Positions 1-46,502 of a stretch of 64,000 nucleotides of DNA are shown here, one piece after another. A program made the translations under genes and the position numbers. The stretch covers positions 1-64,000 of IMG/VR virus record IMGVR_UViG_3300029908_000004. The stretch is one strand, 5' to 3'. The notes beneath the pieces were generated by a model. It searched no databases. It had not been told where the DNA came from and worked only from the letters and a program-made list of their open reading frames with translations. Every line of letters starts with the position of its first letter. Positions within the stretch are counted from its first letter, which is position 1.

Positions 1-841
1 CGACGTGTTCGTATAATGGTAGTTTCAACTTAGCTAACTTGTCCCGCATAGCTTTTACTTTATCTGGGTATTTCTGTAGTCTATCTTGACCTACATCCAT
101 ACTCTCAGAGTCATCAAACCACCCCTCTAAAGCGGGGTCGAAAGCCGTCCATTCATGGCGAGCCCCAGCCCCAACCATACTTAATGTGGCTTTGGAAGAT
201 AACGAAGAGGTACCTATTACAACTAAGTCTCTTCCTTCACTACCCGTGGATAGAACCATGTATCTTTCACCGGGTTTGAACTTAACGTTCGTGCTACCGG
301 GTACTTTATATTCTTTATTACAACGTAGAACTGTACCCTCACAACATCTATCAAACAGAGGTGTGTCACCAGTTACCGGTGGCGGTGGGAAAGGTGTACT
401 TTCTATCTCTTGACGTCTAGCTTCTTTCTTAGCCCAGTTAGTTAGTGTGGGAGAAATATACACTTTTATCCCATAGCTTTCGAATATCTTTGCGTAGGGG
501 TGGTCCTTAAAATCATTCTTTAGATATAACCACAACTCCATATTTAGTTGGCTGTTGTCACAGCACCCAGAAACACCATAGAAAGCAGGATTACGCATTT
601 CCATAACGTGTTTACGCTCTTCTAACTCTCTCCATATATCAACAGCTTCGAGATCATTCGGCTGTATAACTAAATATCTTCCACCCTTATGGAACGTTAC
701 TGATGGGTGTTCTACAACTAATTTTGGAGCTGGTTTAGATGATTTTACTTTCTTCTTTGGTGGCTCCGGTGTTGGATCATTTACTACACTTACGGTCTCT
801 ACCAATCCTACGACTGGAACTTGGATCTTCGTTCTCCTCAA
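1..841 (-). CDS. Large phage protein, N-terminal part (runs off the window start); function unknown
   Basis: Manual translation: an open frame from TTG at 841 to position 1 with no stop (MRRTKIQVPVVGLVETV...KLAKLKLPLYEHV). Absent from the ORF track. Confidence 0.7.
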   Translation of the reverse strand, partial: MRRTKIQVPVVGLVETVSVVNDPTPEPPKKKVKSSKPAPKLVVEHPSVTFHKGGRYLVIQPNDLEAVDIWRELEERKHVMEMRNPAFYGVSGCCDNSQLNMELWLYLKNDFKDHPYAKIFESYGIKVYISPTLTNWAKKEARRQEIESTPFPPPPVTGDTPLFDRCCEGTVLRCNKEYKVPGSTNVKFKPGERYMVLSTGSEGRDLVVIGTSSLSSKATLSMVGAGARHEWTAFDPALEGWFDDSESMDVGQDRLQKYPDKVKAMRDKLAKLKLPLYEHV

Positions 842-846
842 CTTGA

Positions 847-978
847 CTATCCCCCTAAATTAGGGAAAAGCTGTATCTTAAATGGTAGCTTTCCCTTAGT
901 GGCTTGGTAATATAATAAAGCCACATCCATTATTACTGCAACCATTACTACTATAATGGTCACGAAAAACATTCGCAT
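847..978 (-). CDS. Small membrane protein (43 aa)
   Basis: Manual translation MRMFFVTIIVVMVAVIMDVALLYYQATKGKLPFKIQLFPNLGG; one hydrophobic helix. Confidence 0.5.
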   Translation of the reverse strand: MRMFFVTIIVVMVAVIMDVALLYYQATKGKLPFKIQLFPNLGG

Positions 979-987
979 TAACTTCCT

Positions 988-1281
988 TTACATCTTATCG
1001 GGCTTGAACACTATACGTTTCTTCCCTTTGAATTGTGTTACAATCTTTCCTAATCTCCACAATCTCCTTGATGTAGGAGCTTTACGGATGGAAAGAGTCC
1101 CGAGGTTAGGGATTATTATCTCTTCACCTCGGGATATTGCTGCCTGTAAGACAGAAAATACTATGGATACAATAGCCTTAGATTTCCTGATGGGCAAACC
1201 CATCGTTGATGATACTAGCTTTGCTAGTTCTTTCTTGGTTATAGTTCTAGGCTTTTGCCCAAATGTATTCAATTGCCACAT
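988..1281 (-). CDS. HU/IHF-like DNA-binding protein
   Basis: TKKELAKLVS...SKAIVSIVFSVLQAAISRGEEIIIPNLGTLSIRK...KRIVFKP matches the HU/IHF pattern. Confidence 0.8.
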   Translation of the reverse strand: MWQLNTFGQKPRTITKKELAKLVSSTMGLPIRKSKAIVSIVFSVLQAAISRGEEIIIPNLGTLSIRKAPTSRRLWRLGKIVTQFKGKKRIVFKPDKM

Positions 1282-2236
1282 CTACTTTATTCACAATGTC
1301 TGGAATGATATCATCGTAGGACTTTTGCATGTGTCTGCATAGTATCTCTTCGATGGGGCCTTTTACAAAGCCTCTACCATCCTTTATTCTAGCTTCTATC
1401 TCTTTATGTGTTAATATACTACCAGTCTCATCGTATCTTTCTGATAAGTCTTCTCTGGCAGACATAACTATTTCGTCATGGACGACAAATAGGATTCTAG
1501 CATCTTCAGGACCGTAGTTTTTCTCTATCAATTCGTTGTAAACGCCAGCCATTGCTGGTTTTAGCATGTCAACGTTTCCAGCTTGAATAGGTTGATTACC
1601 AGCCCATCTACGTATTTGTGCTAGTAAACCATCTGCGTCTCTATCTTCAGCGGAAGGTAAAGTATAATGTCTAATCCTACCACGAGGAGATGTAGAATAC
1701 CCATAACGTACAGCATTGTTACCTGTTTCTTCTAACCATCTCTTCAAGACATGGAATTTAGCAAAGAAAGCATTTATGAAGTCTTGCGCTGCCTCTGGTG
1801 TCATCCCAGTCATTGCTGCAATTCTAGCAGCACCGGCACCATAAGTAGTGCCAAAGGTTACAGTCTTAATGTTGTTACGGATAGTAGATAATTCTTGGTG
1901 CCTAGGATGTAACGGATCCTTACGAGCTATATTAATAGTGTCATAATCAAAATTTAGTGAGGCACCAAATACTTCTACTGAATTATAACAATGTATGTCT
2001 TTACCTGAGTTAATAGCGGCTATTAGAACTGGATCACGGCTTAGGTGAGCCATAAGCTTCACTTCTATCTGTGCATAATCAGCAGATAGAATCCTATGTC
2101 CTTCTTGTGCTCTAATAGCCTCTCTAATATCAGGAACTCTGGTATAGATATCTGGTGAAACTTTACCATTTTCTTCTATGCGCGCATAGTATTCTTTAAG
2201 GCCGATTTTACCTATTGGCTTATAATTATATTCCAA
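1247..2236 (-). CDS. polA: Family A DNA polymerase, C-terminal (palm/fingers) subunit
   Basis: Motif A ILSADYAQIEVKLMAHLS, motif B RNNIKTVTFGTTYG, motif C ILFVVHDEIV. Confidence 0.93.
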   Translation of the reverse strand: MEYNYKPIGKIGLKEYYARIEENGKVSPDIYTRVPDIREAIRAQEGHRILSADYAQIEVKLMAHLSRDPVLIAAINSGKDIHCYNSVEVFGASLNFDYDTINIARKDPLHPRHQELSTIRNNIKTVTFGTTYGAGAARIAAMTGMTPEAAQDFINAFFAKFHVLKRWLEETGNNAVRYGYSTSPRGRIRHYTLPSAEDRDADGLLAQIRRWAGNQPIQAGNVDMLKPAMAGVYNELIEKNYGPEDARILFVVHDEIVMSAREDLSERYDETGSILTHKEIEARIKDGRGFVKGPIEEILCRHMQKSYDDIIPDIVNKVDVAIEYIWAKA

Positions 2237-2819
2237 TTGCTCCTTCTATTACTAGTTTTACTTTATCTAATGTGTCCTCTATCATTTTTCTGTATTCTAC
2301 AACAGATTTAGTATGCCCAAAACGAGAACATAATTTCATCCATATGGCTACACGAAGTACATCGTCTGGGGACCCGTTACTTTTTATTGTATTAGCTTTA
2401 TGAGATATAACCCAAGAGTTATTTTGTGTGTACCCCTCAATCGGAATGAATTTATCTATCGTTGCCGATTCCGGTACAGGTTTTTCTGTACCAATCATAA
2501 AGCTTGTTCCAAATACGGGGCATGTCTGATTTAGATACTCGTTAACAAAGTCCAATGTTATATCTATTGGAACGTTCTCCAGTCCTGAACGACGTTTAGC
2601 ATTGTTTAGTAAATATCTGGGTTGTTCAGCTTTCCTAGACTTTCTGTAATGTTCTTGTTTCTTAGCCCTCAATTCTATTGCGTTGTTGTGGTGGTGATCC
2701 CTACAGTTACAACGTCTAAGAGTTTGATGGTGTGTTAACTTCCCAGACCTATATTCCTGTAGTAAATCAGGATATTTTTCTAGTCTGGATAATAACTTGG
2801 CTTCTGATAATTTTTGCAT
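2226..2819 (-). mobile_element. Free-standing HNH-type homing endonuclease gene (HEG1)
   Basis: CPVFG...ATIDKFIPIEGYTQNNSWVISHKANTIK beta-beta-alpha motif; insertion flanked by a 7-nt direct repeat AGAGTTC (2134-2140 and 2861-2867, minus strand). Confidence 0.8.
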
Positions 2820-2837
2820 TGGTAATTCTCGTATACC

Positions 2838-3002
2838 TTACATAGTATAGGAGAATTGGTGAACTCTCCAAACAATTTTCTTGTATTGGGTGTTAACAAC
2901 CTCTAGGCCAGTGTCATCCTTGACCACTGGCCTTAAATCATAGTAATATTCTTTACCGTCTTTGATGCCGAGTGGTTGACGTTCGGCTACTATACTACCC
3001 AT
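2838..3002 (-). pseudogene. Displaced original 5' end of the polymerase C-subunit gene (54 aa)
   Basis: MGSIVAERQPLGIKDGKEYYY...KKIVWRV aligns with the current N-terminus MEYNYKPIGKIGLKEYY...PDIYTRV and breaks at the AGAGTTC repeat. Confidence 0.7.
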
Positions 3003-3004
3003 TA

Positions 3005-3454
3005 CTATTCTTCACCCTTTGCTCCATTTGGATCTTCTGTGTCATCCTCGTACAAATCACTAGAGTTAGTGTTATCGTCATTGTTCTCAGCGAGTTGACG
3101 ACCAAGGAGTTCTTGCTGTGCCCTCATGTTATTACGTAGTAACCTCTCAGTAAATCCTTCGAAAGTAATAACACCATTGTTATCTTTGTATGGGATCCAA
3201 ACACGATCACCAGCAATTTGTGTGAAATGAGTAGCTGCAGCCATAAGTAGTTGCAATTCAGCGATTTGTGCGTTGCCCCTACGAATCTGAGCCTGACTAA
3301 CTGCTTTACCAGCTTCACGTTCTGCTGTTACAGCATCAGTCTTTGCTGCTTCTAGATTTAGGAATAGCTGTTCGATTTCCTGTTGTGCCTCTGGTGATAG
3401 TTCATTAATTCTAATCTTTGTGGTTCGAAATGCTTTGCGGAATTGGTTTCCCAT
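3005..3454 (-). CDS. Hypothetical coiled-coil protein between the polymerase halves
   Basis: 149-aa ORF with SD (AGGAG), an alanine/glutamate-rich helix and an acidic tail. Confidence 0.75.
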   Translation of the reverse strand: MGNQFRKAFRTTKIRINELSPEAQQEIEQLFLNLEAAKTDAVTAEREAGKAVSQAQIRRGNAQIAELQLLMAAATHFTQIAGDRVWIPYKDNNGVITFEGFTERLLRNNMRAQQELLGRQLAENNDDNTNSSDLYEDDTEDPNGAKGEE

Positions 3455-3466
3455 AGCTATATTCTC

Positions 3467-3556
3467 CTATTGATACTTCATCCAAACATCTTTGAATTGC
3501 TTTTTAACAAATGCTAACTCTTTTGGATCTTTCACTACTGCGTAGCGCTCTTCCGG
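3467..3556 (-). pseudogene. Displaced original 3' end of the polymerase N-subunit gene
   Basis: PEERYAVVKDPKELAFVKKQFKDVWMKYQ* parallels the current end PTERFCEVKGEELSEIQQLFSEKIKQFTS*; it has no start codon. Confidence 0.7.
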
Positions 3557-3597
3557 ACTATCTGAGTTTCAATTTCGCTTGTTTTCGCTGGATCTAC

Positions 3598-3608
3598 TAT
3601 ACTATATA
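3598..3608 (+). promoter_or_regulatory. TATACTATATA promoter motif of HEG2
   Basis: Lies just upstream of SD AAGGAG and ATG 3626; the same motif precedes all six endonuclease genes. Confidence 0.6.
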
Positions 3609-3625
3609 ATAGCAAGGAGATCAAT

Positions 3626-4261
3626 ATGCGAGGTACTAAGTTAAAGTTAGTTAAAAATCAGGTATTTGGTTACCTAGAAATAATAGAGGAAGACGGATTC
3701 AAACTTCAACCTAGCAACTCTAAGAAGAACTTGAAGGGGATCCGCAAATACCTCTGGAAATGTAGATGTACAGCGCCTAGTATAAAAACCGGAATAGTTT
3801 GTAACAAAATAGTAACTATAGCCGGCTCTGATATGGTTTCTGGACGTGTTATAAGTTGTGGTTGTTGTAGGGGCCATTTCGGTATGGGTGGTTTAGGAAA
3901 AGAGTATTCAAAACGCCGTAACGGAATAGGTAATCCTGCTTTTAGGACTTTGTTACGTAGATATAAGGGTGGTGCTAAAGATCGTAGTATAAAATGGACA
4001 TTAACTGATGAAGAATTCCTGGGATTAACGAGTTCTCCTTGCTTTTATACAGGGAGGTTACCAAGTTCCGAATCCAGATCTGAGAAGTCCAATTTAGGAT
4101 TATATTTATACAATGGCATAGATAGACTAGATAGTTCTAAGGGATATACAAAGGATAATTGCGTACCTTGTTGTAAACAGGCAAACTTCGCTAAACATAC
4201 TCAATCTTTTGATGAATTCATTGAGATGTGTAATATGGTTTCAGACCGTTTTAGGAAGTAA
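3626..4261 (+). mobile_element. Antisense HNH homing endonuclease gene (HEG2)
   Basis: N-terminal WKCRC..C/SCGC element plus CFYTG...NGIDRLDSSKGYTKDNCVPCCKQANFAK; own SD and promoter. Confidence 0.88.
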
Positions 4262-5570
4262 ACTGTTTTATCTTTTCAGAGAAGAGTTGTTGTATCTCAC
4301 TTAGCTCTTCTCCCTTCACCTCACAAAACCTTTCCGTTGGGCGAGGCATTTGCTGGAAGTCACTAGAGTATCTACCTGTAGCGATTGTTCCCTTCTTAGA
4401 TAAACTACCGTCTCCAGAACCTAGTTGATTAAATTCTGGGTGTAACCGTCCAGTCTTTGTATTGACCCTCTTTAGTAGGTTTTCACCGTAAGTCGAAGTA
4501 ACTTTCATTACGTTAGAATACTCTGCTAATGCTTTAGCAATAGGGTGATCAATAGATTCCAATGTTTCTCTCTGGACATTTTCTATATCAAAGTCTAGAT
4601 TTCTCAACGCTGCCAATTTCTGAGCAGGGGAATTAAGATCAAATACATTCTTAACTTCTGGTATTAGGGATAATTCTACTTTACCTTTGCTTTTTAGTTC
4701 CTTGTCATAAGAATTGAGTATTTCTATTTCTAATTCTTTCTGCCTACTCTCCCAATAGGAGAGAGCTAGTTTAAGAGTGTCCCTATCTAAATTAACTCCA
4801 TTGAGTTCCATGGAAGCAGTCACAGGTAGTACGTTAAACTCATCTTGTGCTACTACTTCTAGTTTCCAATGTTTCAGTTGTTCTTTTTGTTCATTCATTA
4901 CTGGAAATAGTAGAATAATATCTCTGGCAGCGTAGTAAGCCATATCTTTGGATATCTTTTCTCCACGTTCTTTGAAGTGGATAAAGTCAGCTCTAACTTC
5001 CTTTGATATCATCCTATAAGGCTTATATCTACGTGCTAGATCTGCTAATCCTACCTTTATTCCATTCAAACCAGAAGTTAGTAGTTGTTCGGCTAGCATA
5101 GTATCATACATATTATTTATATGTATTTTATACTTAACAAATAAGTATTTGAAGTCATATACTAGGTTTTGACCTAGATGTAGAAGTGTTTTATTTTCTA
5201 GGACATCGGCGAGGTAAGGCACTAGTCCGGGTTGTATTAGAAATACTTTACTTTCATTACCTAATTGCAACAGTAATAATTTAGAACCTTCCCGCCAAGG
5301 ATCTAAACCAGATTTCTTATCTTCACCAGTAGTTTCTGTGTCTAACCCAATCGTACCCATTTCAATTAGGGTATCAACTATCCAAGACAGTTGTTTACAT
5401 TCTCTACCTTCATCAATAATTATCCATTGAGAACGAGGGACGGCTTCTGTCTCGAAGCCGTCCTCTAACCATTCTTTATAGCCAACAACATAATAGTTGA
5501 TTGGTATTTTCTCTTCTATTTGATGGCTTACTATCTCTATAGATTTGCCCCGTATTGGAGCTCTACTCAT
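4251..5570 (-). CDS. polA: Family A DNA polymerase, N-terminal subunit (3'-5' exonuclease plus thumb)
   Basis: ExoI GLDTETTG, ExoII GQNLVYDFKYL, ExoIII YAARD, and RLHPEFNQ...TGRYSS. Confidence 0.92.
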   Translation of the reverse strand: MSRAPIRGKSIEIVSHQIEEKIPINYYVVGYKEWLEDGFETEAVPRSQWIIIDEGRECKQLSWIVDTLIEMGTIGLDTETTGEDKKSGLDPWREGSKLLLLQLGNESKVFLIQPGLVPYLADVLENKTLLHLGQNLVYDFKYLFVKYKIHINNMYDTMLAEQLLTSGLNGIKVGLADLARRYKPYRMISKEVRADFIHFKERGEKISKDMAYYAARDIILLFPVMNEQKEQLKHWKLEVVAQDEFNVLPVTASMELNGVNLDRDTLKLALSYWESRQKELEIEILNSYDKELKSKGKVELSLIPEVKNVFDLNSPAQKLAALRNLDFDIENVQRETLESIDHPIAKALAEYSNVMKVTSTYGENLLKRVNTKTGRLHPEFNQLGSGDGSLSKKGTIATGRYSSDFQQMPRPTERFCEVKGEELSEIQQLFSEKIKQFTS

Positions 5571-5583
5571 TACTTAACCTCAT

Positions 5584-6159
5584 TCACTTTTCATTGAAAG
5601 GTCTATAAAATAGGGAGCTATACACAACCTGTGTTGCCATATCTCTCAATAACTCTAGATTACCTGATACCACACCAATAACTAAATCAAATGGGTACCC
5701 GTCTAATTGTGTTTCAGATGCGTGATTAGGATCTCTTGATGGGTCAATGAATTGTGTCCCATCTGGATTAAGTCTAATGATATCAATTACCAATCCACCT
5801 AATGATTTAATCCAGTTCGCTTCATTAATAAATCTTACATCCGTTATCACGGCGATTCCGGGTTCTTCTTGTAGTATTCTAGCGTTTACCTTACTTATCC
5901 AGCAATCTGGGTCTCTTGCTCTTTCTACTTCAGTACCTATGTACTGAAGCATCTTCGGATAATTATAGATTGGATCTGGTTTAGTATCCAATTCAATAAA
6001 TGGATATTTTATTACTAGACTCTCGTGGTTATCCCTACAAAAGATCTTCAATTCCTTCGCAAATGAATAAGTTCTTGCGTATGAATACTCTTCTAATATA
6101 GACTTGGCAAACGTGTCTTTACCTTGTCTAGCTTTGTGTCCTAGACCTATGATTAGCAT
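5584..6159 (-). CDS. Deoxynucleoside monophosphate kinase
   Basis: IIGLGHKARQGKDT P-loop, LQYIGTE, VITDVRFINEA, HASE. Confidence 0.9.
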   Translation of the reverse strand: MLIIGLGHKARQGKDTFAKSILEEYSYARTYSFAKELKIFCRDNHESLVIKYPFIELDTKPDPIYNYPKMLQYIGTEVERARDPDCWISKVNARILQEEPGIAVITDVRFINEANWIKSLGGLVIDIIRLNPDGTQFIDPSRDPNHASETQLDGYPFDLVIGVVSGNLELLRDMATQVVYSSLFYRPFNEK

Positions 6160-6647
6160 TATTTATGTTTGGTTTGGTTATCAAGAACCTTTTGTATATT
6201 TGCTGGTGAGTATGTGTCTGGCGGTTTAATAACCTTACCGTCTTCCCTCTTGTGGATAGTTCCATCTGACCAGACTTTACTCATATTAGAGCGGTTCACT
6301 TCTTCGAATACTTCTTGTCCTTCTACCCCAGCTGCACTGAAGGCTCCATAAGTAACAACTAATTGGTCTGCACAAGCGTCAACGTACTCAACAAAGTCGG
6401 GTTCGAAATTGTCTGTATCAATATAAACATCCTGTGAACCAATTCTTAGGACTTGCCCAGCTCTATCATTAATGAATAAATTACATCCACAAGCTTTTAC
6501 AAATTCCATTGCCTCTTCATATACTAATCTTGCTCTGAGACGCAATGTATCTTTATCAGGCAATTCTGGGCTACTCTTAACCTCTTGGCCAAAGAGTTCC
6601 ATCATCTTATTAACATCGCCTTGTGGATTATATGGTTTTTCTGACAT
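6159..6647 (-). CDS. MazG/PRA-PH-like NTP pyrophosphohydrolase
   Basis: LRARLVYEEAMEF...DACADQLVVTYG...EVNRSNMSK...REDGKVIKP. Confidence 0.85.
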   Translation of the reverse strand: MSEKPYNPQGDVNKMMELFGQEVKSSPELPDKDTLRLRARLVYEEAMEFVKACGCNLFINDRAGQVLRIGSQDVYIDTDNFEPDFVEYVDACADQLVVTYGAFSAAGVEGQEVFEEVNRSNMSKVWSDGTIHKREDGKVIKPPDTYSPANIQKVLDNQTKHK

Positions 6648-7068
6648 CCTTTAATTCCTCTTTCCAAGCTTCAGTTGCTATCCATCCTCTGGATATCCCA
6701 TCTACTGCTATGTAGGCTTCTATTACACTAGACAGCCTCTCTCCCAGTGGACGATCACTATCTTCTATTATACTAGCATGCTCATCTAATCTCAAACCAT
6801 ATTCACGAAGAATATTTTGTAGGACTGGCATTACAATACCCACTCCTAATTTTTCCAAAGACCTTACAACTCTTCCAGCATCTGTTAGATACAGTTTTTT
6901 CCCTTTAGGTTTTTGATATGCATAAACTATGATTTGTTCGTTGTCTTTTGTTTTAAAAGGTAGTTGTATTTGATAGGTAAGGACGAGATCTTTGACTTCA
7001 CTTATGATAATGTGCTTGGCGTTGTATAGTGGCAAAGCTTCTTTTAATATTTTTGCTTCACGTCTCAT
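6628..7068 (-). CDS. DUF1828-like protein
   Basis: QLPFKTKDNEQIIVY...YLTDAGRVV pattern. Confidence 0.55.
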   Translation of the reverse strand: MRREAKILKEALPLYNAKHIIISEVKDLVLTYQIQLPFKTKDNEQIIVYAYQKPKGKKLYLTDAGRVVRSLEKLGVGIVMPVLQNILREYGLRLDEHASIIEDSDRPLGERLSSVIEAYIAVDGISRGWIATEAWKEELKDVRKTI

Positions 7069-7114
7069 TAGTTTCTTTGCACCAGTTGGCTATAGTTTAT
7101 CTAAACAAATGGAA

Positions 7115-7138
7115 GCGCTAGGTATTTAATTCTAGCGC
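7115..7138 (-). terminator. Probable intrinsic terminator hairpin
   Basis: GCGCTAG/CTAGCGC stem followed by a T-rich tract on the minus strand. Confidence 0.45.
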
Positions 7139-7151
7139 CTCCCGTAATAGT

Positions 7152-7418
7152 TTACATACGTTTTGTTTCATTATCCCGCTCCAATGGCGGCTTCACACCT
7201 TCAATATCCAAACTTACAGTAGTGGATGTGTTTAGAGCTTCATACAGGTCTTCAGATAGTGAATCTGATATAACTAACCTAAGGGCTACTTCCATAAACC
7301 TTGGCGCTTTTTCTATCTTAATCAATTGGATACGAGCTGGTACCTTCATATCTTGAAATAGAAAACCACCATTGTTATAAACAGCGTTTACATTGACGTG
7401 TACTTTCCCATTTGCCAC
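7152..7418 (-). CDS. Hypothetical protein
   Basis: 88-aa ORF, GTG start with SD. Confidence 0.55.
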   Translation of the reverse strand: MANGKVHVNVNAVYNNGGFLFQDMKVPARIQLIKIEKAPRFMEVALRLVISDSLSEDLYEALNTSTTVSLDIEGVKPPLERDNETKRM

Positions 7419-7509
7419 GTGTCACCTCTGTATGCGTTTAAATTGAGGATTACTACTTTTCTACAGTCTTAATGTATTTGAGCATAGAACAATCACTCCT
7501 AAAAAATGA

Positions 7510-10032
7510 TTACTTACATTTAGAGTAACCACACAACACACTACATTCTGTGCAGCCTGATATAAATCTTAGCTGTGCCCCACAATCAGGGCATTTAGGT
7601 GTATGTTTTGTTATATTTTCATCTTTGATAGCTGCTAGCTTTGTCTCAATAACAAATGGTATATTGGAAATCTTTGAGGCGAAGTATGGTGCTGCCTTCT
7701 CAAAGATGACTTCATCTATTAGCTGAACGGCAGAAGTAAAACACTTACCGTTATACCATAAAGCAGACTGCCCACCAACTCTTCTTAGTTGTTGGCGTAT
7801 CTCTTTGGAAGACACATTGGATCTAAGCAATAAACTTATTAATCTACCTGCTAATTCTATCCATTCATTACCAGCGTTCTCACGTAGAAATACTTCTATT
7901 ACTCTACCCTCAATCTGATGATTAACGGTTACGTATAGCTTACCATCTCTACCATCTGGGATAACATAAGTTCCCCCATCTAGGAAATCTGGACGCTCAA
8001 TAACTTCTTTCTCTTGTATCGGTTTTAGTACTGTTTTAAGAGATGTGGGCTTCTTCTCTTCTCTTATTAGTACACCTTCACGACATCCGTCTCTGTATAC
8101 AGTTATTCCTTTTAGCTTAAGCTTGAATGCTAGGTTATATACATAAGCAACGTCCTCTACTGTGGACGTAGTTGGCATATTAACTGTTTTGGATATAGCG
8201 TTATCACAATACTTCTGAAATGCAGCTTGCATTCTAACGTGTTGTTCAGGGGTTACTTGACTAGCATCTACAAAATAACTAGGAAGTTTATCTTCTTTGT
8301 GTTCAGCTAACCAAGCTTCTGCCCTTGAATCATAGTACTCTCTTACACCAATTGTATCCTGTCTAGTATATTTAAAAGCAAATATAGGCTCTATACCAGA
8401 AGAACATTCATCTATAAGAGAAATAGTCCCTGTTGGGGCTATAACAGTAACGTGACAGTTTCTAACTCCATGCTTTTTGTACAACGAGTATAAGGTTTGG
8501 TTTTGAGTAATATAACGATGAGCAGGATGACAATTTATATCCTTAGATAATTGTCCCATCTTATTATCAAAGAATTCTACATTATTCTCTAGCTCTGGAA
8601 AGGGTCCAAACTCCTTGGAAAGCATAGTAGATTCAATCCAAGCGTAGTATTGTATCCACTGTCCTATCCTTTCACCCACTTCATATGATTCATCACTACC
8701 ATAAGCGATATGTAAATCTAATAGTAAATCTGCTACTCCCATTACACCTAAACCAATAGGTCTAGAAGCTTTGGTAGTGTCAGTTATCTCTTGGATAGGA
8801 TATTCGTTTTTCTCTATAACCGCATCTAGGAATCTAGCGGCCTTACGGGCTGTAATTGCTAATCTCTTCCAGTCTACATAGTTATACCAAGCATCTGATT
8901 TATCAGATGCTTTAGCTGTAAAGAATTTACTTACATTAATAGAACCAAGATTGCAAGAATTGTGATCTACTTGATAGTATTCCCCACACGGATTGGAATT
9001 ATGTATAGGTCCTAAAGACTTGACTGGGTTATCATCGTTGACAATATCATCAAACATAATTCCGGGTTCGGCAGAGGACCATGCTGATTCTAATATCCTC
9101 TGCCATAACAGCTTAGCTCTAACATATTTGATACCATCCTTCTCGACAACGATGTTAGCGTCATTGCGAGGATCCAGAACTGGACCTCTCCAGGGCTCAT
9201 AGCGTACTTGTTTTGCCCGTGGACCATTCTCCGGGTCATCTACAATAGCTCGGCGCAACATAAAGAGTCCATCTTCTTCAAGTACTTTCATGAACTCATT
9301 AGTTACTTTAACAGAGATATTGAAACCAGAGAATGGGGAATGCCAAGTATCTTGCTGAACACTGTTTCCATGGTCGGTGACGTCAAGCCAACCGACATCC
9401 TGCGCTACCTGGCGAGCTTGCTCTAGGCTCAGACCGTACTGGTTTAGCAGGGTGTTCAACAACCAAGGCCCAGTCTTGACTTTGCAATCTATAAAAGCCA
9501 AGATTTCAGGGTGCCAGACAGCTAACATCCACATCATAGCGATGCGCCTTCTGCCTCCCTGAACAATCGCTTCGCTCATAGCCTGAAATGGACCCATGAA
9601 GCTTATAACACCTGAAGCGATTCCACCTGAATTAGTTAACGCACCATATGGTCGGATTTGAGACCCGTCCATGCCAATACCACCACCAGTCTTCCCAATA
9701 ATGGCACCGTCTTGAATTGCTTTGAAGATACCTGGTATATCATCTGGTACATGGAGGATATAACAAGCAGATAAAGACTTCTTACTTACATAAGGATTCC
9801 CAGCATTAAACCATGTTGGGGAATTAGGAGAAAACTCCTGATTATACATTAGTCTGAAGAAAGATTCTTCTAGACCCTGTGGTTCCCCTGATGGATAAGC
9901 GCTGGAAATATCTTTTGCTACACGACGACAACAATGCTCCCATTCCGTCTCGATTTTATTGCCTTGTGGATCACGGAGATAGTAGCGTTCACTTAACACC
10001 TTTTCGGTGTTAGGTTTTAAAACTCTTCCCAT
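7510..10032 (-). CDS. nrdJ: Class II (adenosylcobalamin-dependent) ribonucleotide reductase with C-terminal TSCPD/zinc-ribbon domain
   Basis: PNSPTWFNAG, SACYIL, SNPCGE, CNLGSIN, RPIGLGVMG, IAPTGTIS, DNAISKTVN, LKGITVYRDG, terminal CPDCG...CSVLCGYSKC; no NrdB nearby. Confidence 0.92.
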   Translation of the reverse strand: MGRVLKPNTEKVLSERYYLRDPQGNKIETEWEHCCRRVAKDISSAYPSGEPQGLEESFFRLMYNQEFSPNSPTWFNAGNPYVSKKSLSACYILHVPDDIPGIFKAIQDGAIIGKTGGGIGMDGSQIRPYGALTNSGGIASGVISFMGPFQAMSEAIVQGGRRRIAMMWMLAVWHPEILAFIDCKVKTGPWLLNTLLNQYGLSLEQARQVAQDVGWLDVTDHGNSVQQDTWHSPFSGFNISVKVTNEFMKVLEEDGLFMLRRAIVDDPENGPRAKQVRYEPWRGPVLDPRNDANIVVEKDGIKYVRAKLLWQRILESAWSSAEPGIMFDDIVNDDNPVKSLGPIHNSNPCGEYYQVDHNSCNLGSINVSKFFTAKASDKSDAWYNYVDWKRLAITARKAARFLDAVIEKNEYPIQEITDTTKASRPIGLGVMGVADLLLDLHIAYGSDESYEVGERIGQWIQYYAWIESTMLSKEFGPFPELENNVEFFDNKMGQLSKDINCHPAHRYITQNQTLYSLYKKHGVRNCHVTVIAPTGTISLIDECSSGIEPIFAFKYTRQDTIGVREYYDSRAEAWLAEHKEDKLPSYFVDASQVTPEQHVRMQAAFQKYCDNAISKTVNMPTTSTVEDVAYVYNLAFKLKLKGITVYRDGCREGVLIREEKKPTSLKTVLKPIQEKEVIERPDFLDGGTYVIPDGRDGKLYVTVNHQIEGRVIEVFLRENAGNEWIELAGRLISLLLRSNVSSKEIRQQLRRVGGQSALWYNGKCFTSAVQLIDEVIFEKAAPYFASKISNIPFVIETKLAAIKDENITKHTPKCPDCGAQLRFISGCTECSVLCGYSKCK

Positions 10033-26983: not shown

Positions 26984-27366
26984 CTAGAAGTATTCTATTT
27001 TTATATTCTCTTGGGACATCATCTGGTCTACCTTCTTCCAGATTTCTTCATCAGTCATTTCTATGATAACATTACTTTGACCTAGTCTACGTGCTACTTC
27101 TATTTTATGCCAAGCTTTGAACGCAGAGGTATTAACACACTTAACGAACGCCTGTTCTTTGTTCTTGGCTTGGTCTCTACCATCTCTATGCTCAGCTGTT
27201 GCTCCAGAATCAATGTGGATACACCTTACACCATTCTGTTTGGCGTTTCTGTGAATATAGGTCTCCCGACCTAATGCTGACCGCCGTTACCGCCCGTGCA
27301 GAAAGTCTCAAAGGTAAAATCCTTGCGAGTGAGAGTAAATAATAGGTGCTTTTCTTTTTTAGACAT
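26984..27366 (-). CDS. GGQ peptide-release-factor-like protein (RF-1 domain, ArfB-like), interrupted by a 20-nt coding gap
   Basis: Frame 1, 27366-27274: MSKKEKHLLFTLTRKDFTFETFCTGGNGGQH then TAG. Frame 2 resumes at CAC 27253: HRNAKQNGVRCIHIDSGATAEHRDGRDQAKNKEQAF...IKIEYF*. The joined product would be 119 aa. Confidence 0.85.
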
Positions 27367-27949
27367 CTTGATTCCCCTTCTTGTGTTTAGCTAGGTAAGC
27401 AATGGCTTCTTCTAGGAGATGCTCATCTTCATTCAATAAACCTATGGCTGTGTTGCATTTGCTACATAGTAATCCTCTATGCTTCCCAGAGGAGTGGCAG
27501 TGATCCAGAGACAATCTAATCAATTTACCTTGTCTTGTCTTTGTTTCTTTCTCTTTACAGATAGCACACTTGCCTTCCTGTGCTTCATGAAGGTTATTAT
27601 ATTCCTGCCTTGTGACTCCGTACTTAGTTTTCAAGCAACTATTATAAGACTGCTCATATATCTTATCTTTGTTCTTGTGTCTGTTTCTAGTTGTTATCAG
27701 TCCTGTAGACTTGCTCCAGCAGGTTTTACAGATATGCCTTTTTCCTAATCTATCCCTCCGGTCGTAAAATTCACCTGATGTTTTATCAAGCTTGCATTTA
27801 GTACATATTCTTCCGGTTGGAGTTTCCAGTATAGATTTCTGGTATAGATTAAAGCAATTAGTAGAACAGAATGATTTACGGTTTGGTTTTATTTGACTGG
27901 GCTTCTTGGGGTGTACTTTCGTACAGTAGGTACATATTACATTCATCAT
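27359..27949 (-). mobile_element. Endonuclease VII-like HNH homing endonuclease gene (HEG3)
   Basis: LKTKYGVTRQEYNNLHEAQEGKCAIC...LSLDHCHSSGKHRGLLCSKCNTAIG; N-terminal zinc fingers. Confidence 0.9.
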
Positions 27950-44559: not shown

Positions 44560-44781
44560 ATGAACGATAATTTGATTAAAATCTGCCGTAAATGTAAAAT
44601 CCCTAAAGATCGTGACGAATTCCCGTGGAAGAACAAATCCAAAGGAATTCGCCATAATACTTGTAAGCATTGTACACGGGACTATAGTGAAAACTATTAC
44701 AAGTCAAATCAAAATGAACTATCAGAGAAAGCTAAACTACACCAAAGGGAGAAAAGAGCTGCTAAACCAAATGTGGTTTAA
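44560..44781 (+). pseudogene. Truncated antisense homing endonuclease (N-terminal zinc finger only; HEG5)
   Basis: KICRKCKIPK...EF...TCKHC; promoter TATACTATATA at 44534-44544 and SD GAGGTG; no nuclease domain. Confidence 0.65.
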
Positions 44782-46502
44782 GCTTCTAATTCCTTCTCTC
44801 GTGGTTCAGCATCATAGCTATCAATAGACAGTTTCATGTCCTCAGAGAACTTTATAGCCACTTCTACTGATCTCTTGATATCTCCTATTCTAATCTCACG
44901 ACCATTATCTGCCCGAGCTAGTGTTTGTGACAAACGGATGGCATTTTTGATTTGTCGTCCGTTTAGATTATAAACACTCATCTCTTTCGACCACTGTGCA
45001 TTCATTTTGGCCGCTTCTAGTAGGTTGTACCAGATTTTCTCTCTCTTTTCCTGTCCGTTGTTACAGAAATGAAGTGCTACAGAGATGCGGCTATAAAATG
45101 CCTTATCAATATTCTTGACACGATTGGTGGTAAGGAAAAGTACTCCGTTGTGATATTCTAGCAAACGAAGGAAAACACCAACCATAGCATTTCTTTCGAT
45201 GTCGTGCTCATCACGAGCTTCCAAGAAGATATCTGCCTCATCCAGAAGGATAACAGCATCCCAAATCGTTGCTACCTCCAAGATATTGCGTAAATGAGAT
45301 TCCAAGTGTTCTGTATCTGTTCCCAATTCTCCTACTGAGACTGAATACAGTGGCTTGTGAAGAATTTCTGCAACTGCTTCAGCAGAAGCAGTTTTACCTA
45401 ACCCCGGTTCTCCATGAAGCAGGAAGATGCAGCCTCCACCTTTACCTTCAATGATATCGGTGAATCCGCCACCATGGTATTTAACCAGAGAGTAAATCAA
45501 ATCCTTACTGTCTTGATCCAACACCAGTCGATCAAAAGCATCCTCACGGAAATTGATCTCGCTCAAGCCAGAAAGTCTTAGACGTCCCCATTCCTTAACT
45601 TGTAAGCTAAACCCCAGAAGATATGGATAACAGCGCCAATAGTCTTCTTCTTTTAACTTGGTTTCATCTTTTTGGGTAACTTCTACTTCATCGTCGTCTT
45701 CCAAATTGATACCCAACATACGTCCACATTGGCCCCAAACGTCAGGTTTTAATCTGGAGAAGGAAACTGGATCGATTACCACACGACCAGAAGCTCTCGT
45801 TATCTTGTTCCCGAGCCAACTTGGTGATATCATGTTGCCTTCGTAATGAAGGTACCTACCCGGTTTAGACATTGATAGAATCTTCTCTCCACGTTCGGAC
45901 ATGGACTTCTTCTCAGAGTCAGTGACCAACCGAATTGGTAACGAACTAATTGGTACGCTACCCGGGAATCCGTTTATTCCGAATGAATAATCATTCTCCA
46001 CGATTTTGCCGCATAACCCATGTATAACCCTTAGGGAGATCCTGAATACAGGACCCATCCATGTATAATCTATTCTTGACTTCCTGACGATACCACCAAT
46101 GGCTTCTTCCCCTTGGATAACAACTTCTTTCTCTTCTGGGAAATATCTTATCATATCGTTAAGGGTAAGAACTCCGTTATCGATTCTTGCTAAGAATAAT
46201 TTCTCTAACAATTCCCCCATCGACTGAATATATTTATAAAGGTCTTTACCCTTTTTGTCAGTTTTCAGCGATGTCCCCTCGTTTGATACATAGCCGTGAT
46301 AAAACTGACACAATACATAGATAGGGTATCTATGACGATATATAATTGCGGCTTCGTAATCCCATACTTTTGTTAGATCGCTAAACACTAAAGTCTTTAT
46401 ATATTGGTCTTTAACAGATCGGAAACAGACCACTTCTTCACCAGAAATATCAAGAATTGTGTAGAAGTCTGTTGCATTAATTAATTTCTCTGCGATTTCC
46501 AT
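44778..46502 (-). CDS. AAA+ ATPase
   Basis: LLHGEPGLGKTASAEAVAE, ILLDEADIFLE, LFLTTNRV..IDKAFYSRI; start placed at MEIAEK because the longer frame overlaps two tRNAs. Confidence 0.88.
   Translation of the reverse strand: MEIAEKLINATDFYTILDISGEEVVCFRSVKDQYIKTLVFSDLTKVWDYEAAIIYRHRYPIYVLCQFYHGYVSNEGTSLKTDKKGKDLYKYIQSMGELLEKLFLARIDNGVLTLNDMIRYFPEEKEVVIQGEEAIGGIVRKSRIDYTWMGPVFRISLRVIHGLCGKIVENDYSFGINGFPGSVPISSLPIRLVTDSEKKSMSERGEKILSMSKPGRYLHYEGNMISPSWLGNKITRASGRVVIDPVSFSRLKPDVWGQCGRMLGINLEDDDEVEVTQKDETKLKEEDYWRCYPYLLGFSLQVKEWGRLRLSGLSEINFREDAFDRLVLDQDSKDLIYSLVKYHGGGFTDIIEGKGGGCIFLLHGEPGLGKTASAEAVAEILHKPLYSVSVGELGTDTEHLESHLRNILEVATIWDAVILLDEADIFLEARDEHDIERNAMVGVFLRLLEYHNGVLFLTTNRVKNIDKAFYSRISVALHFCNNGQEKREKIWYNLLEAAKMNAQWSKEMSVYNLNGRQIKNAIRLSQTLARADNGREIRIGDIKRSVEVAIKFSEDMKLSIDSYDAEPREKELEA

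What the first reader, a model, noticed from the sequence alone, without database searches (positions are those of the whole stretch)
2134..3002. HEG1 cassette brings a replacement N-terminus for the polymerase C-subunit
Seen: the 54-aa ORF 3002-2838 (…PLGIKDGKEYYY…KKIVWRV) aligns with the current leader (…PIGKIGLKEYYA…PDIYTRV). The 727-nt insertion is bounded by AGAGTTC direct repeats at 2861-2867 and 2134-2140. This is the same architecture as the release-factor cassette but without a coding gap.
Basis: partly seen in the sequence, partly recalled or inferred. Interest (0 to 1): 0.6.

Follow-up and report, generated by a model that had tools for sequence, protein, structure and literature searches.

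The report
Homing-endonuclease cassette carrying a spare polymerase N-terminus
In a peat jumbo phage, a selfish endonuclease gene sits inside the second half of a split DNA polymerase gene. It brought a foreign copy of the 5' end it displaced, so the essential gene stays whole, an arrangement known from fungal mitochondria and yeast but which I did not find described for phages.

Summary

- **Setting.** The window is the start of a 215-kb phage record. Its family A DNA polymerase is split into an N-subunit (5570-4251) and a C-subunit (2236-1247), with a conserved 149-aa gene between them.
- **Native start.** About 115 relatives' C-subunits begin M..LG..GKEYY..(loop)..VWRV-PDIREA. ORF54 codons 1-47 match this profile (43.8 bits).
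- **Excision.** Removing 727 nt (2860-2134) in silico gives an open 342-aa gene. It is colinear with the closest relative that lacks the endonuclease gene (L003).
- **Insert.** It carries HEG1, a 197-aa HNH/endonuclease-VII-like ORF, followed by 34 codons. These begin at a TTG that overlaps the HEG1 stop.
- **Foreign leader.** The 34 codons encode the same polymerase module (12.4 bits; 0 of 5000 shuffles). They are the short-loop type of the most distant relatives, whereas ORF54's similarity tracks the gene body (rho 0.80 against 0.13).
- **Not an intron.** No ribozyme was detected and no spliced form was seen.

Three cautions apply. The direct ORF54-leader alignment alone is not significant (p about 0.11). 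AGAGTTC is the shared Arg-Val-Pro codons, not a target-site duplication. No release-factor domain was found in the genome.

Closest analogues are the fungal mitochondrial mobile-ORF (mORF) hybrid genes and the yeast WHO elements.

The parts
4251..5570 (-). PolA N-subunit gene (439 aa): 3'-5' exonuclease plus the first part of the polymerase domain, ending ...QQMPRPTERFCEVKGEELSEIQQLFSEKIKQFTS
   Evidence: Pfam DNA_pol_A_exo1 at 2.4e-17 and DNA_pol_A profile positions 5-124. The tail is native: it aligns with relatives and with the unsplit relative P0100.
3626..4261 (+). HEG2, a second endonuclease-VII/HNH-like ORF (211 aa) on the opposite strand, lying between the N-subunit gene and ORF149. 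It is absent from relative L003.
   Evidence: PHROG phrog_1035 at 4.6e-17 and phrog_3322 at 2.3e-14. The L003 gene order lacks it.
3005..3454 (-). ORF149, a conserved gene of unknown function that lies between the two polymerase genes in all split relatives examined
   Evidence: Homologues of 137-166 aa sit in the same position in L003, L004, L010, L011, L018 and L172. DNA is 78% identical to L003. No Pfam hit.
2838..3002 (-). ORF54, the displaced native 5' end of the C-subunit gene. Codons 1-47 (3002-2862) are followed by 7 read-through codons and a stop inside the cassette. It keeps its ATG 2 nt after the ORF149 stop.
   Evidence: 43.8 bits against the profile of relatives' N-termini. Similarity to relatives tracks body similarity, rho 0.80. 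Aligns to L003 2249-2353.
2134..2860 (-). The 727-nt insert: a 41-nt spacer, HEG1, and the new 5' end of the C-subunit gene
   Evidence: blastn against L003 shows about 727 extra nt. In-silico excision restores an open 342-aa gene that is 241/342 identical to P0002.
2226..2819 (-). HEG1, a free-standing HNH/endonuclease-VII-like ORF (197 aa) with its own start and stop, in a different frame from the polymerase
   Evidence: PHROG phrog_3322 'endonuclease' at 6.7e-23 and phrog_1035 'endonuclease VII' at 1.2e-5. No Pfam or PDB sequence hit. The motif has D-K where canonical endonuclease VII has D-H. Single copy in the genome.
2135..2236 (-). Replacement leader: 34 codons (LEYNYKPIGKIGLKEYYARIEENGKVSPDIYTRV). 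TTG start at 2236-2234, GAAGGAG at 2246-2240, overlapping the HEG1 stop (2228-2226) by 11 nt.
   Evidence: 12.4 bits against the family profile, 0 of 5000 shuffles. Best matches are distant relatives P0116, P0105, P0104 and P0109. Modelled as three beta-strands with pLDDT 79-89. Lies in the predicted interface with the N-subunit.
1247..2236 (-). Current PolA C-subunit gene (329 aa): a hybrid of the foreign leader and the native palm/fingers body with motifs A, B and C
   Evidence: Pfam DNA_pol_A at 1.3e-43, profile positions 140-351. 118 relatives found. AlphaFold2 mean pLDDT 94.6.
2861..2867 (-). Left AGAGTTC (codons R46, V47 and the first base of the next codon). Homology to relatives ends immediately after it.
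2134..2140 (-). Right AGAGTTC (codons R33, V34 and the first base of P35)
2100..2133 (-). Possible co-converted tract just downstream of the junction. This is suggestive only.
   Evidence: By hand count on the alignment, the first 36 nt after AGAGTT are 78% identical to the distant L004 and 58% to the near L003. The next 44 nt are 61% and 75%. The blastn match to L003 starts at 2101. Residue R42 is found in 0/41 near-clade and 11/14 far-clade relatives.

Best explanation
A free-standing homing-endonuclease gene (HEG1) has homed into the 5' part of the gene for the C-terminal subunit of a split family A DNA polymerase, between the codons for ...VWRV and PDIRE....

The mobile unit is HEG1 plus a downstream 34-codon copy of the polymerase N-terminal module. 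That copy came from a divergent phage lineage. It is in frame with the resident gene body and has its own Shine-Dalgarno (ribosome-binding) sequence and TTG start overlapping the HEG1 stop.

The essential gene is therefore re-headed rather than broken. The C-subunit is now a hybrid of a foreign beta-meander leader and the native palm/fingers. The native first 47 codons are pushed upstream as the 54-codon relic ORF54.

Shown here:
- ORF54 is the native start.
- The leader is a homologous but phylogenetically discordant copy.
- Excision restores the ancestral gene.
- There is no intron.
- The hybrid is predicted to be well folded and to dock on the N-subunit through the leader.

Inferred, by analogy with yeast WHO elements and fungal mORFs:
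- HEG1 cuts HEG-less alleles at a site spanning the WRV|PDIR junction. That site is destroyed in both copies of the HEG-bearing genome.
- The new leader therefore confers immunity.
- The gene body and the ORF54 relic serve as the two homology arms for further homing.
- Translation may run by coupling from ORF149 to ORF54, then HEG1, then PolC.
For: 1. Native start. 118 relatives' C-subunits, mostly 300-350 aa, begin with the LG..GKEYY...VWRV-PDIREA module. ORF54 scores 43.8 bits against their profile.
2. Empty site. L003, whose C-subunit is 73% identical in protein, has N-subunit, ORF152 and a 342-aa C-subunit with no endonuclease gene. The window is colinear with it apart from about 727 nt. 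Excision yields an open 342-aa frame that is 241/342 identical to P0002.
3. Leader homology. 12.4 bits, with 0 of 5000 shuffles as high.
4. Discordance. ORF54's similarity to relatives correlates with gene-body similarity (rho 0.80, p 1e-26). The leader's does not (rho 0.13). The leader's top matches, P0116, P0105, P0104 and P0109, are among the most distant bodies (relative score 0.30-0.36). They share the signature G-K/N-I/V-G-hydrophobic-K-E-Y.
5. HEG1 identity. It matches phage endonuclease PHROGs at 6.7e-23 and is absent from relatives at this site.
6. No intron. Rfam finds nothing in 1-8000 at E<=1, yet finds a group I intron in relative L018. A contig from an RNA library is colinear across 2092-2261, and no joints appear in 3 RNA and 1 DNA runs.
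7. Fold. The hybrid C-subunit model has mean pLDDT 94.6, with leader strands at residues 5-11, 14-20 and 26-32.
8. Assembly. The complex model supports binding but does not show it. The score is 0.78 against a best control of 0.00. That mark was reached by 58 of 80 solved complexes and 2 of 110 mismatched pairs. The runs agree in at least 84% of contacts and the partner's pLDDT is at least 88. The counts hold only roughly, because my own alignments were used. Leader residues 5-34 are in the interface.
9. Precedent. PMC3630166 describes the mORF hybrid genes. PMC7282813 section 10 describes the WHO unit as an endonuclease gene plus a resistance-conferring gene end, with the old end left as a relic.
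Against: - No donor was found. Distant relatives with leader-like N-termini carry no endonuclease gene upstream (L004, L172, L173, L175).
- The only HEG1 homologues found are not next to a polymerase.
- HEG1 has no Pfam or PDB sequence hit. It has Lys where canonical endonuclease VII/HNH has the catalytic His. Its model is poor, with pLDDT 61 and a best fold match to the HNH enzyme PacI at only E 0.18. Nuclease activity is therefore unproven.
- The leader has Thr where a Trp is nearly invariant (...IYTRV against ...VWRV).
- All sampled copies of this phage are nearly identical, so no HEG-less allele of the same species and no selection signal are available.
- One variant contig (L174) lacks the HEG1 3' end, the SD and the TTG start.
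- The complex prediction may simply recall the fold of intact PolA.
Confidence: 0.75

Rival explanations
1. In-situ origin. The first ~47 codons were tandemly duplicated in this lineage, HEG1 landed between the copies, and the expressed copy then diverged and shortened quickly. Under this reading nothing was imported except HEG1.
For: No donor lineage with HEG1 upstream of a short-type C-subunit was found. GC content of the insert is not distinct. Short modules can converge on the generic motif.
Against: The two copies share no detectable DNA similarity. The leader carries the specific GK(I/V)G-hydrophobic-KEY signature and the short loop of the distant clade. The first ~36 nt downstream also look more like the distant L004 than the near L003. 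It would be odd for the expressed, constrained copy to be the one that diverged while the unexpressed relic stayed family-typical (43.8 bits).
Confidence: 0.1
2. ORF54 is still a working third piece of the polymerase, assembling in trans, and the leader on the C-subunit is a dispensable or non-functional appendage.
For: ORF54 is intact over all 47 native codons. It keeps the ATG coupled to the ORF149 stop and keeps every conserved residue. The leader has lost the near-invariant Trp. Variant L174 lacks the TTG start of the leader.
Against: The leader is modelled as a confident three-stranded module covalently continuous with PDIRE. It forms much of the predicted interface with the N-subunit. 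Two copies of one module cannot both occupy the site. The only canonical start codon before motif A is TTG 2236, because the frame opens only 3 codons upstream.
Confidence: 0.06
3. The 727 nt are a self-splicing intron carrying HEG1. Splicing restores the ancestral 342-aa reading frame, and the leader resemblance is fortuitous.
For: Excision is exactly in frame. Relative L018 has a group I intron with an HNH ORF elsewhere in the same gene.
Against: Rfam finds nothing at E<=1 in 1-8000, while the same search finds the L018 intron. Only 41 nt upstream and 92 nt downstream (2225-2134) of HEG1 lie outside its ORF, which is too little for a ribozyme core. The leader's homology to the family is significant. 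An RNA-library contig is colinear across the 3' boundary and no joints were seen.
Confidence: 0.03
4. Chance. The leader is just the translated 3' flank of an inserted gene and only happens to resemble the module.
For: The direct ORF54-leader alignment is not significant (557 of 5000 shuffles).
Against: The profile test gives 0 of 5000 shuffles. In a six-frame scan of the whole window, this frame is the only hit besides ORF54 (1.5e-6, though that hit includes PDIREA). The position and frame are exact, and the predicted fold is confident.
Confidence: 0.03

Closest known systems
Yeast WHO elements at FBA1 (Coughlan et al. 2020, PMC7282813)
   Same: The mobile unit is an endonuclease gene plus an adjacent copy of one end of an essential host gene. 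Integration replaces that end, yields a chimeric but intact gene with discordant phylogeny of its two parts, and leaves the old end as a relic beside the endonuclease gene. The relic and the gene body provide the homology arms.
   Different: WHO replaces the 3' end of a nuclear gene, whereas here the 5' end with a new start codon is replaced. WHO proteins are intein-derived LAGLIDADG-zinc-finger proteins, whereas HEG1 is HNH/endonuclease-VII-like. The host here is a phage. There is one relic, not a cluster. Cleavage and resistance were demonstrated for WHO and are untested here.
Fungal mitochondrial mobile ORFs with foreign gene ends: Allomyces macrogynus atp6; Glomus sp. atp6, atp9, cox2, nad3 (Beaudet et al. 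2013, PMC3630166)
   Same: An endonuclease ORF is inserted in a protein gene together with a divergent, apparently horizontally acquired copy of the gene terminus, in phase with the gene core. The native terminus is displaced and resembles close relatives.
   Different: Those cases involve C-termini and LAGLIDADG or GIY-YIG enzymes in organelles. The order there is core, inserted end, mORF, native end. Here it is the mirror image: native end, HEG, inserted end, core.
Free-standing HEGs that split phage genes: mobE in Aeromonas phage Aeh1 nrdA, and the HEG between cistrons 43A and 43B of T4-related phage 25. The T4-family review PMC2988022 turned up but was not opened. These examples are from my own knowledge.
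   Same: A free-standing phage HEG sits inside or between pieces of an essential replication gene. The gene keeps working as separate polypeptides, without an intron or intein.
   Different: To my knowledge those cases cut the gene into pieces without importing a duplicate of the displaced coding end. Here the gene piece is not shortened but re-headed with a foreign copy.
Split phage family A DNA polymerases with a small unknown ORF between the halves (MEP401-type OM43 phages, PMC10580990; clade B T7-like cyanophages, PMC12695635)
   Same: The background architecture is the same kind: two polymerase genes, and in the MEP401-type phages an intervening small unknown ORF.
   Different: Kinship with those phages was not tested. 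They explain the split, not the HEG1 cassette.

Membership tests
Free-standing homing endonuclease gene (HNH / endonuclease VII, His-Me finger) | ORF with a His-Me finger nuclease domain | tested here: inconclusive
   Sequence evidence:
- PHROG phrog_3322 'endonuclease' at 6.7e-23.
- phrog_1035 'endonuclease VII' at 1.2e-5.
- ESM Atlas neighbours with a family are HNH/Endonuclease_7, at 0.89-0.90, which is a lead only.
- No Pfam hit even at E 10, and no PDB sequence hit.

Structural evidence: the AlphaFold2 model has pLDDT 61 with a beta-beta-alpha element at 119-148. The best fold match is PacI HNH at E 0.18.
Free-standing homing endonuclease gene (HNH / endonuclease VII, His-Me finger) | Catalytic His of the D-H / HNH motif | tested here: not met
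   Aligned with the canonical endonuclease-VII-like ORF at 27359-27949 (LDHCH...CN), HEG1, HEG2, P0133 and P0134 all have D-K or D-R at that place. D122 and N143 are conserved. Activity may use another residue or may be lost.
Free-standing homing endonuclease gene (HNH / endonuclease VII, His-Me finger) | Presence/absence polymorphism at a conserved site of a conserved gene; own start and stop; not in an intron or intein | tested here: met
   HEG1 is absent at this site from L003, L004, L010, L011, L018, L172, L173 and L175. The insertion is at the most conserved block, WRVPDIREA. It has a separate frame with its own ATG and TAA. No intron was found.
Free-standing homing endonuclease gene (HNH / endonuclease VII, His-Me finger) | Site-specific cleavage of the HEG-less allele and gene conversion | not testable with these tools
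   Needs enzyme assays. No HEG-less allele of the same phage appeared in contigs of 4 runs.
Endonuclease plus portable gene-end homing unit (WHO / mORF type) | The endonuclease gene is flanked by two copies of the same end of the host gene, one in frame with the gene and one displaced | tested here: met
   ORF54 (43.8 bits) and the leader (12.4 bits, 0 of 5000 shuffles) match the same family profile and flank HEG1.
Endonuclease plus portable gene-end homing unit (WHO / mORF type) | The displaced copy is native and the in-frame copy is phylogenetically discordant with the gene body | tested here: met
   Spearman correlation with body similarity is 0.80 for ORF54 and 0.13 for the leader. The leader's best matches are the most distant relatives.
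Endonuclease plus portable gene-end homing unit (WHO / mORF type) | The hybrid gene remains intact and plausibly functional | tested here: met
   The gene is an open 329-aa frame containing motifs A, B and C. Model mean pLDDT is 94.6. The complex model with the N-subunit supports binding: score 0.78 against a best control of 0.00. That mark was reached by 58 of 80 solved complexes and 2 of 110 mismatched pairs. The runs agree in at least 84% of contacts, and the partner's pLDDT is at least 88. This is prediction only.
Endonuclease plus portable gene-end homing unit (WHO / mORF type) | The imported end makes the allele resistant to the endonuclease | not testable with these tools
   Inference only. 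The genome must be immune to its own HEG. The relic keeps everything upstream of AGAGTTC and the hybrid keeps everything downstream, so a target spanning the junction is destroyed in both.
Group I intron with intron-encoded HEG | Ribozyme core flanking or embedding the ORF; a spliced RNA form | tested here: not met
   There is no Rfam match at E<=1 in 1-8000. As a positive control, the L018 intron gives RF00028 at 29.9 bits, E 3.9e-5. No joints appear in the RNA-library contigs, and a colinear contig covers 2092-2261.
Intein | In-frame insertion translated with the host protein | tested here: not met
   HEG1 is in a different frame from both ORF54 and the C-subunit, with stops between them.
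Split family A DNA polymerase | Separate, conserved genes for the exonuclease plus N-terminal polymerase part and the palm/fingers part, predicted to assemble | tested here: met
   Pfam places the N-subunit at polymerase profile positions 5-124 and the C-subunit at 140-351. 118 split relatives were found. The unsplit relative P0100 shows that the two halves are contiguous PolA sequence. The complex model supports binding: score 0.78 against a best control of 0.00. That mark was reached by 58 of 80 solved complexes and 2 of 110 mismatched pairs. The runs agree in at least 84% of contacts, and the partner's pLDDT is at least 88.

The most novel reading that the evidence does not exclude
This is an active phage counterpart of the yeast WHO elements: a homing unit that invades an essential gene without an intron or intein. 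It would do so by carrying a cleavage-resistant spare 5' end complete with start codon, using the displaced native 5' end as its upstream homology arm. Polymerase C-subunit translation would also become dependent on translation of the endonuclease gene.
Probability: 0.4. Interest if true: 0.7.

Novelty: new variant of a known kind. Interest (0 to 1): 0.55.

Why it matters
- **A third route into essential genes.** Free-standing phage HEGs are usually thought to sit between genes, or to need an intron or intein to live inside one. This locus shows a third way: the element brings its own copy of the coding end it displaces.
- **An explanation for mosaic gene ends.** The mechanism accounts for mosaic, phylogenetically discordant ends of replication genes, and for small 'orphan' ORFs beside nuclease genes in phage genomes.
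- **A practical warning.** Polymerase marker-gene phylogenies can be chimeric at their ends.
- **A convergent strategy.** The strategy known from fungal mitochondria and yeast nuclei also seems to operate in viruses of bacteria, which suggests a general solution for selfish nucleases.
- **A structural test.** The swapped module lies in the predicted subunit interface, so it is a natural experiment on how much a split polymerase's interface tolerates.

Tried and rejected
- **Phage record search.** Megablast of 1-6000 against phage records gave no match. tblastn found only distant polymerases below 35% identity, and nothing for ORF54.
- **Collection scans.** Context for close relatives came instead from exact-protein look-ups.
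- **HEG1 relatives.** The word search found only two (P0133, P0134). One is beside a terminase gene and neither is beside a polymerase. The exhaustive protein search was not run.
- **Other short-looking C-subunits.** P0043, P0047 and P0106 were checked as possible further HEG cases. They are gene-calling artefacts, two of them with probable ATC starts.
- **HEG1 fold.** The model is low-confidence and no significant fold match was found.
- **Uninformative scans.** Promoter and terminator scans were not above shuffles. GC profile was flat. The direct-repeat search found nothing beyond short chance repeats.
- **Similar trick at HEG2.** I considered whether HEG2 used the same arrangement, because ORF149's ELSPEAQQEIEQLF resembles the N-subunit tail's ELSEIQQLF. 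I rejected this: both sequences are native in relatives.
- **Reads.** Only contigs were available, so neither expression level nor rare HEG-less alleles could be judged.
Full report
**Setting**

The window is the first 64 kb of a 215,291-bp IMG/VR virus record. Near-identical DNA occurs in many peat metagenomes and in a second IMG/VR contig at 99.99% identity. All genes discussed here lie on the minus strand except HEG2, which is on the plus strand. Reading in the direction of transcription:

| Feature | Coordinates | Notes |
|---|---|---|
| PolA N-subunit | 5570-4251 | 439 aa; 3'-5' exonuclease plus DNA_pol_A profile positions 5-124 |
| HEG2 | 3626-4261 (+) | endonuclease-like ORF on the opposite strand |
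| ORF149 | 3454-3005 | conserved, unknown function |
| ORF54 | 3002-2838 | see below |
| HEG1 | 2819-2226 | 197 aa |
| PolA C-subunit | 2236-1247 | 329 aa; TTG start; DNA_pol_A profile positions 140-351 |

**The split polymerase is ancestral to the group**

A word-indexed protein search found 118 relatives of the C-subunit, nearly all 295-360 aa and encoded as separate genes. Where neighbours were examined, the order is N-subunit, a 137-166-aa ORF149 homologue, then C-subunit (L003, L004, L010, L011, L018, L172). One unsplit relative, P0100, reads straight through. It runs from ...QQIPRP through a tail like that of our N-subunit, into ...PVFLGIIGGKEYY...VQWRVPDIREAF. Both the N-subunit tail and the C-subunit N-terminal module are therefore genuine polymerase sequence.

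**ORF54 is the native start of the C-subunit**

Relatives begin M..(L/I)G..(D)GKEYY..(variable loop)..(V/I)VWR(V/I)-PDIREA. ORF54 residues 1-47 fit this pattern exactly.
- A profile of relatives' N-termini scores ORF54 at 43.8 bits, E 1.5e-12.
- In a six-frame scan of the whole window, only two frames hit that profile: ORF54 and the start of the present C-subunit.
- The closest relative with context is L003, whose C-subunit P0002 is 73% identical. It has N (448 aa), ORF152 and C (342 aa) abutting, with no endonuclease gene.
- By blastn, window 2972-2868 matches L003 2249-2353 and window 2101-1247 matches L003 2393-3247. Forty nucleotides of L003 therefore face 767 nt of the window.
- Deleting 2860-2134 (727 nt) in silico gives one open frame of 342 codons. 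That is the same length as P0002, and it is 241/342 identical, reading ...KKIVWRVPDIREAI....

They do read it.

**The present leader is a second, foreign copy of the same module**

The 34 residues before PDIRE (LEYNYKPIGKIGLKEYYARIEENGKVSPDIYTRV) align only weakly with ORF54 directly. The local score is 29, and 557 of 5000 shuffles reach it. The DNA is not alignable.

Against a clean profile of 112 relatives' modules, cut before PDIR, the leader scores 12.4 bits and none of 5000 composition-preserving shuffles reaches that. Its best pairwise matches are:
- P0116: MVSLGNIGLKEYYFEEGG...
- P0105: MIVPVGKVGIKEYAMKFDKDNPGGVLVWRV
- P0104
- P0109

These are among the most distant relatives by gene body (relative score 0.30-0.36). 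Across 114 relatives, ORF54's similarity rises with body similarity (Spearman 0.80, p 1e-26), while the leader's does not (0.13). The gene is thus a chimera of a distant-type head on a native body, with the native head lying just upstream. Downstream of the junction there is a hint of a short co-converted tract:
- By my count on the alignment, the first 36 nt are 78% identical to the distant L004 and 58% to the near L003.
- The next 44 nt are 61% and 75% respectively.
- The blastn match to L003 starts only at 2101.
- Arg42 occurs in 0 of 41 near relatives and 11 of 14 distant ones.

This is suggestive only, because the nearest relative has Lys at that position.

**The 'direct repeats'**

AGAGTTC is present at both places, but it is simply AGA-GTT-C, the Arg-Val-Pro codons shared by the two homologous copies. 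The heptamer occurs 16 times in the window against 10 expected. It marks where homology between relic and relatives stops. It could have served as microhomology at the left junction. It is not a target-site duplication.

**What HEG1 is**

- HEG1 matches phage endonuclease families: phrog_3322 at 6.7e-23, phrog_1035 'endonuclease VII' at 1.2e-5, and more weakly an HNH family.
- HEG2 belongs to the same group.
- Language-model neighbours that carry a Pfam family are HNH/Endonuclease_7, which is a lead only.
- Pfam and PDB sequence searches find nothing.
- The AlphaFold2 model is poor (pLDDT 61), though it shows a beta-beta-alpha unit at 119-148.
- Its weak fold matches are dominated by HNH nucleases, the best being PacI at E 0.18, which is not significant.
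- Aligned with a canonical endonuclease-VII-like ORF elsewhere in the window (LDHCH...CN), the HEG1 group has D-K or D-R in place of D-H.

Catalytic competence is therefore open. HEG1 is single-copy in the genome. Its only detected homologues are not next to polymerases.

**Not an intron, not an intein**

- HEG1 has its own ATG and TAA and is out of frame with both flanks.
- Only 41 nt upstream and 92 nt downstream (2225-2134) of HEG1 lie outside its ORF. The downstream stretch is the coding leader.
- Rfam at E<=1 finds nothing in 1-8000. The same search finds a group I intron with a 200-aa HNH ORF at the TFGVP|YGAG site of relative L018.
- Contigs from three metatranscriptome libraries and one DNA run show no joints.
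- One RNA-library contig runs colinearly over 2092-2261, across the right boundary and the HEG1/PolC overlap. DNA carry-over cannot be excluded there.

**Is the hybrid plausible as a working subunit?**

- The polymerase frame opens only three codons upstream of TTG 2236.
- GAAGGAG lies at 2246-2240, and the TTG sits 8 nt before the HEG1 stop. This is an arrangement typical of translational coupling, read directly from the sequence.
- With a 36-sequence alignment, the C-subunit folds at mean pLDDT 94.6. The leader forms three strands (residues 5-11, 14-20, 26-32) at pLDDT 79-89.
- A complex model of N-subunit residues 235-439 with the C-subunit supports binding but does not show it. The score is 0.78 against a best control of 0.00.
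- That mark was reached by 58 of 80 solved complexes and 2 of 110 mismatched pairs. These counts hold only roughly, because my own alignments were used.
- The runs agree in at least 84% of contacts, and the partner's pLDDT is at least 88.
- Leader residues 5-34 and the N-subunit tail (411-438) are both in the interface. Because intact PolA structures are known, this pass may reflect memory of the fold.

The near-invariant Trp of VWRV is Thr in the leader, preceded by a Tyr. That is a caution.

**Mechanism proposed**

The arrangement is the mirror image of two described systems.
- In fungal mitochondria, mobile endonuclease ORFs carry a foreign C-terminal piece of atp6, atp9, cox2 or nad3 in phase with the gene core, with the native C-terminus displaced downstream (PMC3630166).
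[quoted passage not shown] Each homing event replaces that end and leaves the old one as a relic that later serves as a homology arm (PMC7282813, section 10).

By analogy I propose the following steps, none of which is shown here.
1. HEG1 recognises a site spanning the WRV|PDIR junction of HEG-less alleles.
2. The HEG-bearing genome must be immune to its own enzyme. The relic keeps everything up to AGAGTTC and the hybrid keeps everything from AGAGTTC on, so a target needing native sequence on both sides is destroyed in both.
3. After cleavage, the recipient's native 5' end pairs with the donor's relic and the gene body pairs with the donor's body, which copies in HEG1 plus the leader.
4. The first insertion into this lineage probably came from a distant relative in which the HEG sat just upstream of the C-subunit gene. 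Homologous repair would have occurred only on the conserved downstream side.

No such donor was found.

**Novelty**

The components are known: split phage PolA genes (PMC10580990, PMC12695635), free-standing phage HEGs, and endonuclease-borne gene ends in fungi and yeast. In the library searched I found no description of a phage HEG carrying a replacement 5' end with its own start codon for the gene it interrupts. That is an absence in a limited, open-access literature search, not proof. I rate this a new variant of a known kind, of moderate interest.

Noticed in passing
L174 (JGI contig Ga0302191_10042643), equivalent to window ~2280-2225: A variant contig of the same phage carries a 56-nt deletion. 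It removes the last 17 codons of HEG1, the GGAG and the TTG start of the C-subunit. The leader codons from YKPIGK onward remain, but no canonical start precedes them in frame. This is HEG decay in the population, a defective genome, or an assembly artefact.
   Followed up: partly
L010 4851-4900; L011 4815-4860: In two relatives the C-subunit frame has no ATG, GTG or TTG before the conserved module. A strong SD (TAGGAG or GAAGGAG) is followed after 7 nt by ATC, giving (M)SVQVERELLG and (M)AKEEREYLG. This is probable ATC initiation. Gene callers truncated both proteins.
   Followed up: partly
L018 5338-5994 (IMGVR_UViG_3300033977_000108): A distant relative's C-subunit gene is interrupted at TFGVP|YGAG by a group I intron (RF00028, 29.9 bits, E 3.9e-5, below the gathering score) that carries a 200-aa HNH ORF.
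   Followed up: partly
window 3005-3454 (-): ORF149 has homologues of 137-166 aa between the two polymerase genes in every split relative examined, and none in the unsplit relative P0100. It has no Pfam or PHROG assignment. It may be the original splitter or a polymerase accessory.
   Followed up: partly
window 3626-4261 (+): HEG2 is a second endonuclease-VII-like ORF of the same D-R subgroup. It is inserted on the opposite strand between the N-subunit gene and ORF149, overlaps the N-subunit stop by 11 nt, and is absent from L003. No duplicated gene end was found here.
   Followed up: partly
window 27359-27949 (-) and 44560-44925 (+): There are two further endonuclease-VII-like sequences. The first is an intact 196-aa ORF with the canonical LDHCH...CN motif. 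The second is a fragment interrupted by stops, next to a 621-aa ATPase-like ORF.
   Followed up: no
   Followed up: partly
window 988-1281 (-): An HU-type DNA-binding protein gene (Bac_DNA_binding, 3e-10) overlaps the end of the C-subunit gene. It is conserved in that position in relatives L010, L173 and L174.
   Followed up: no
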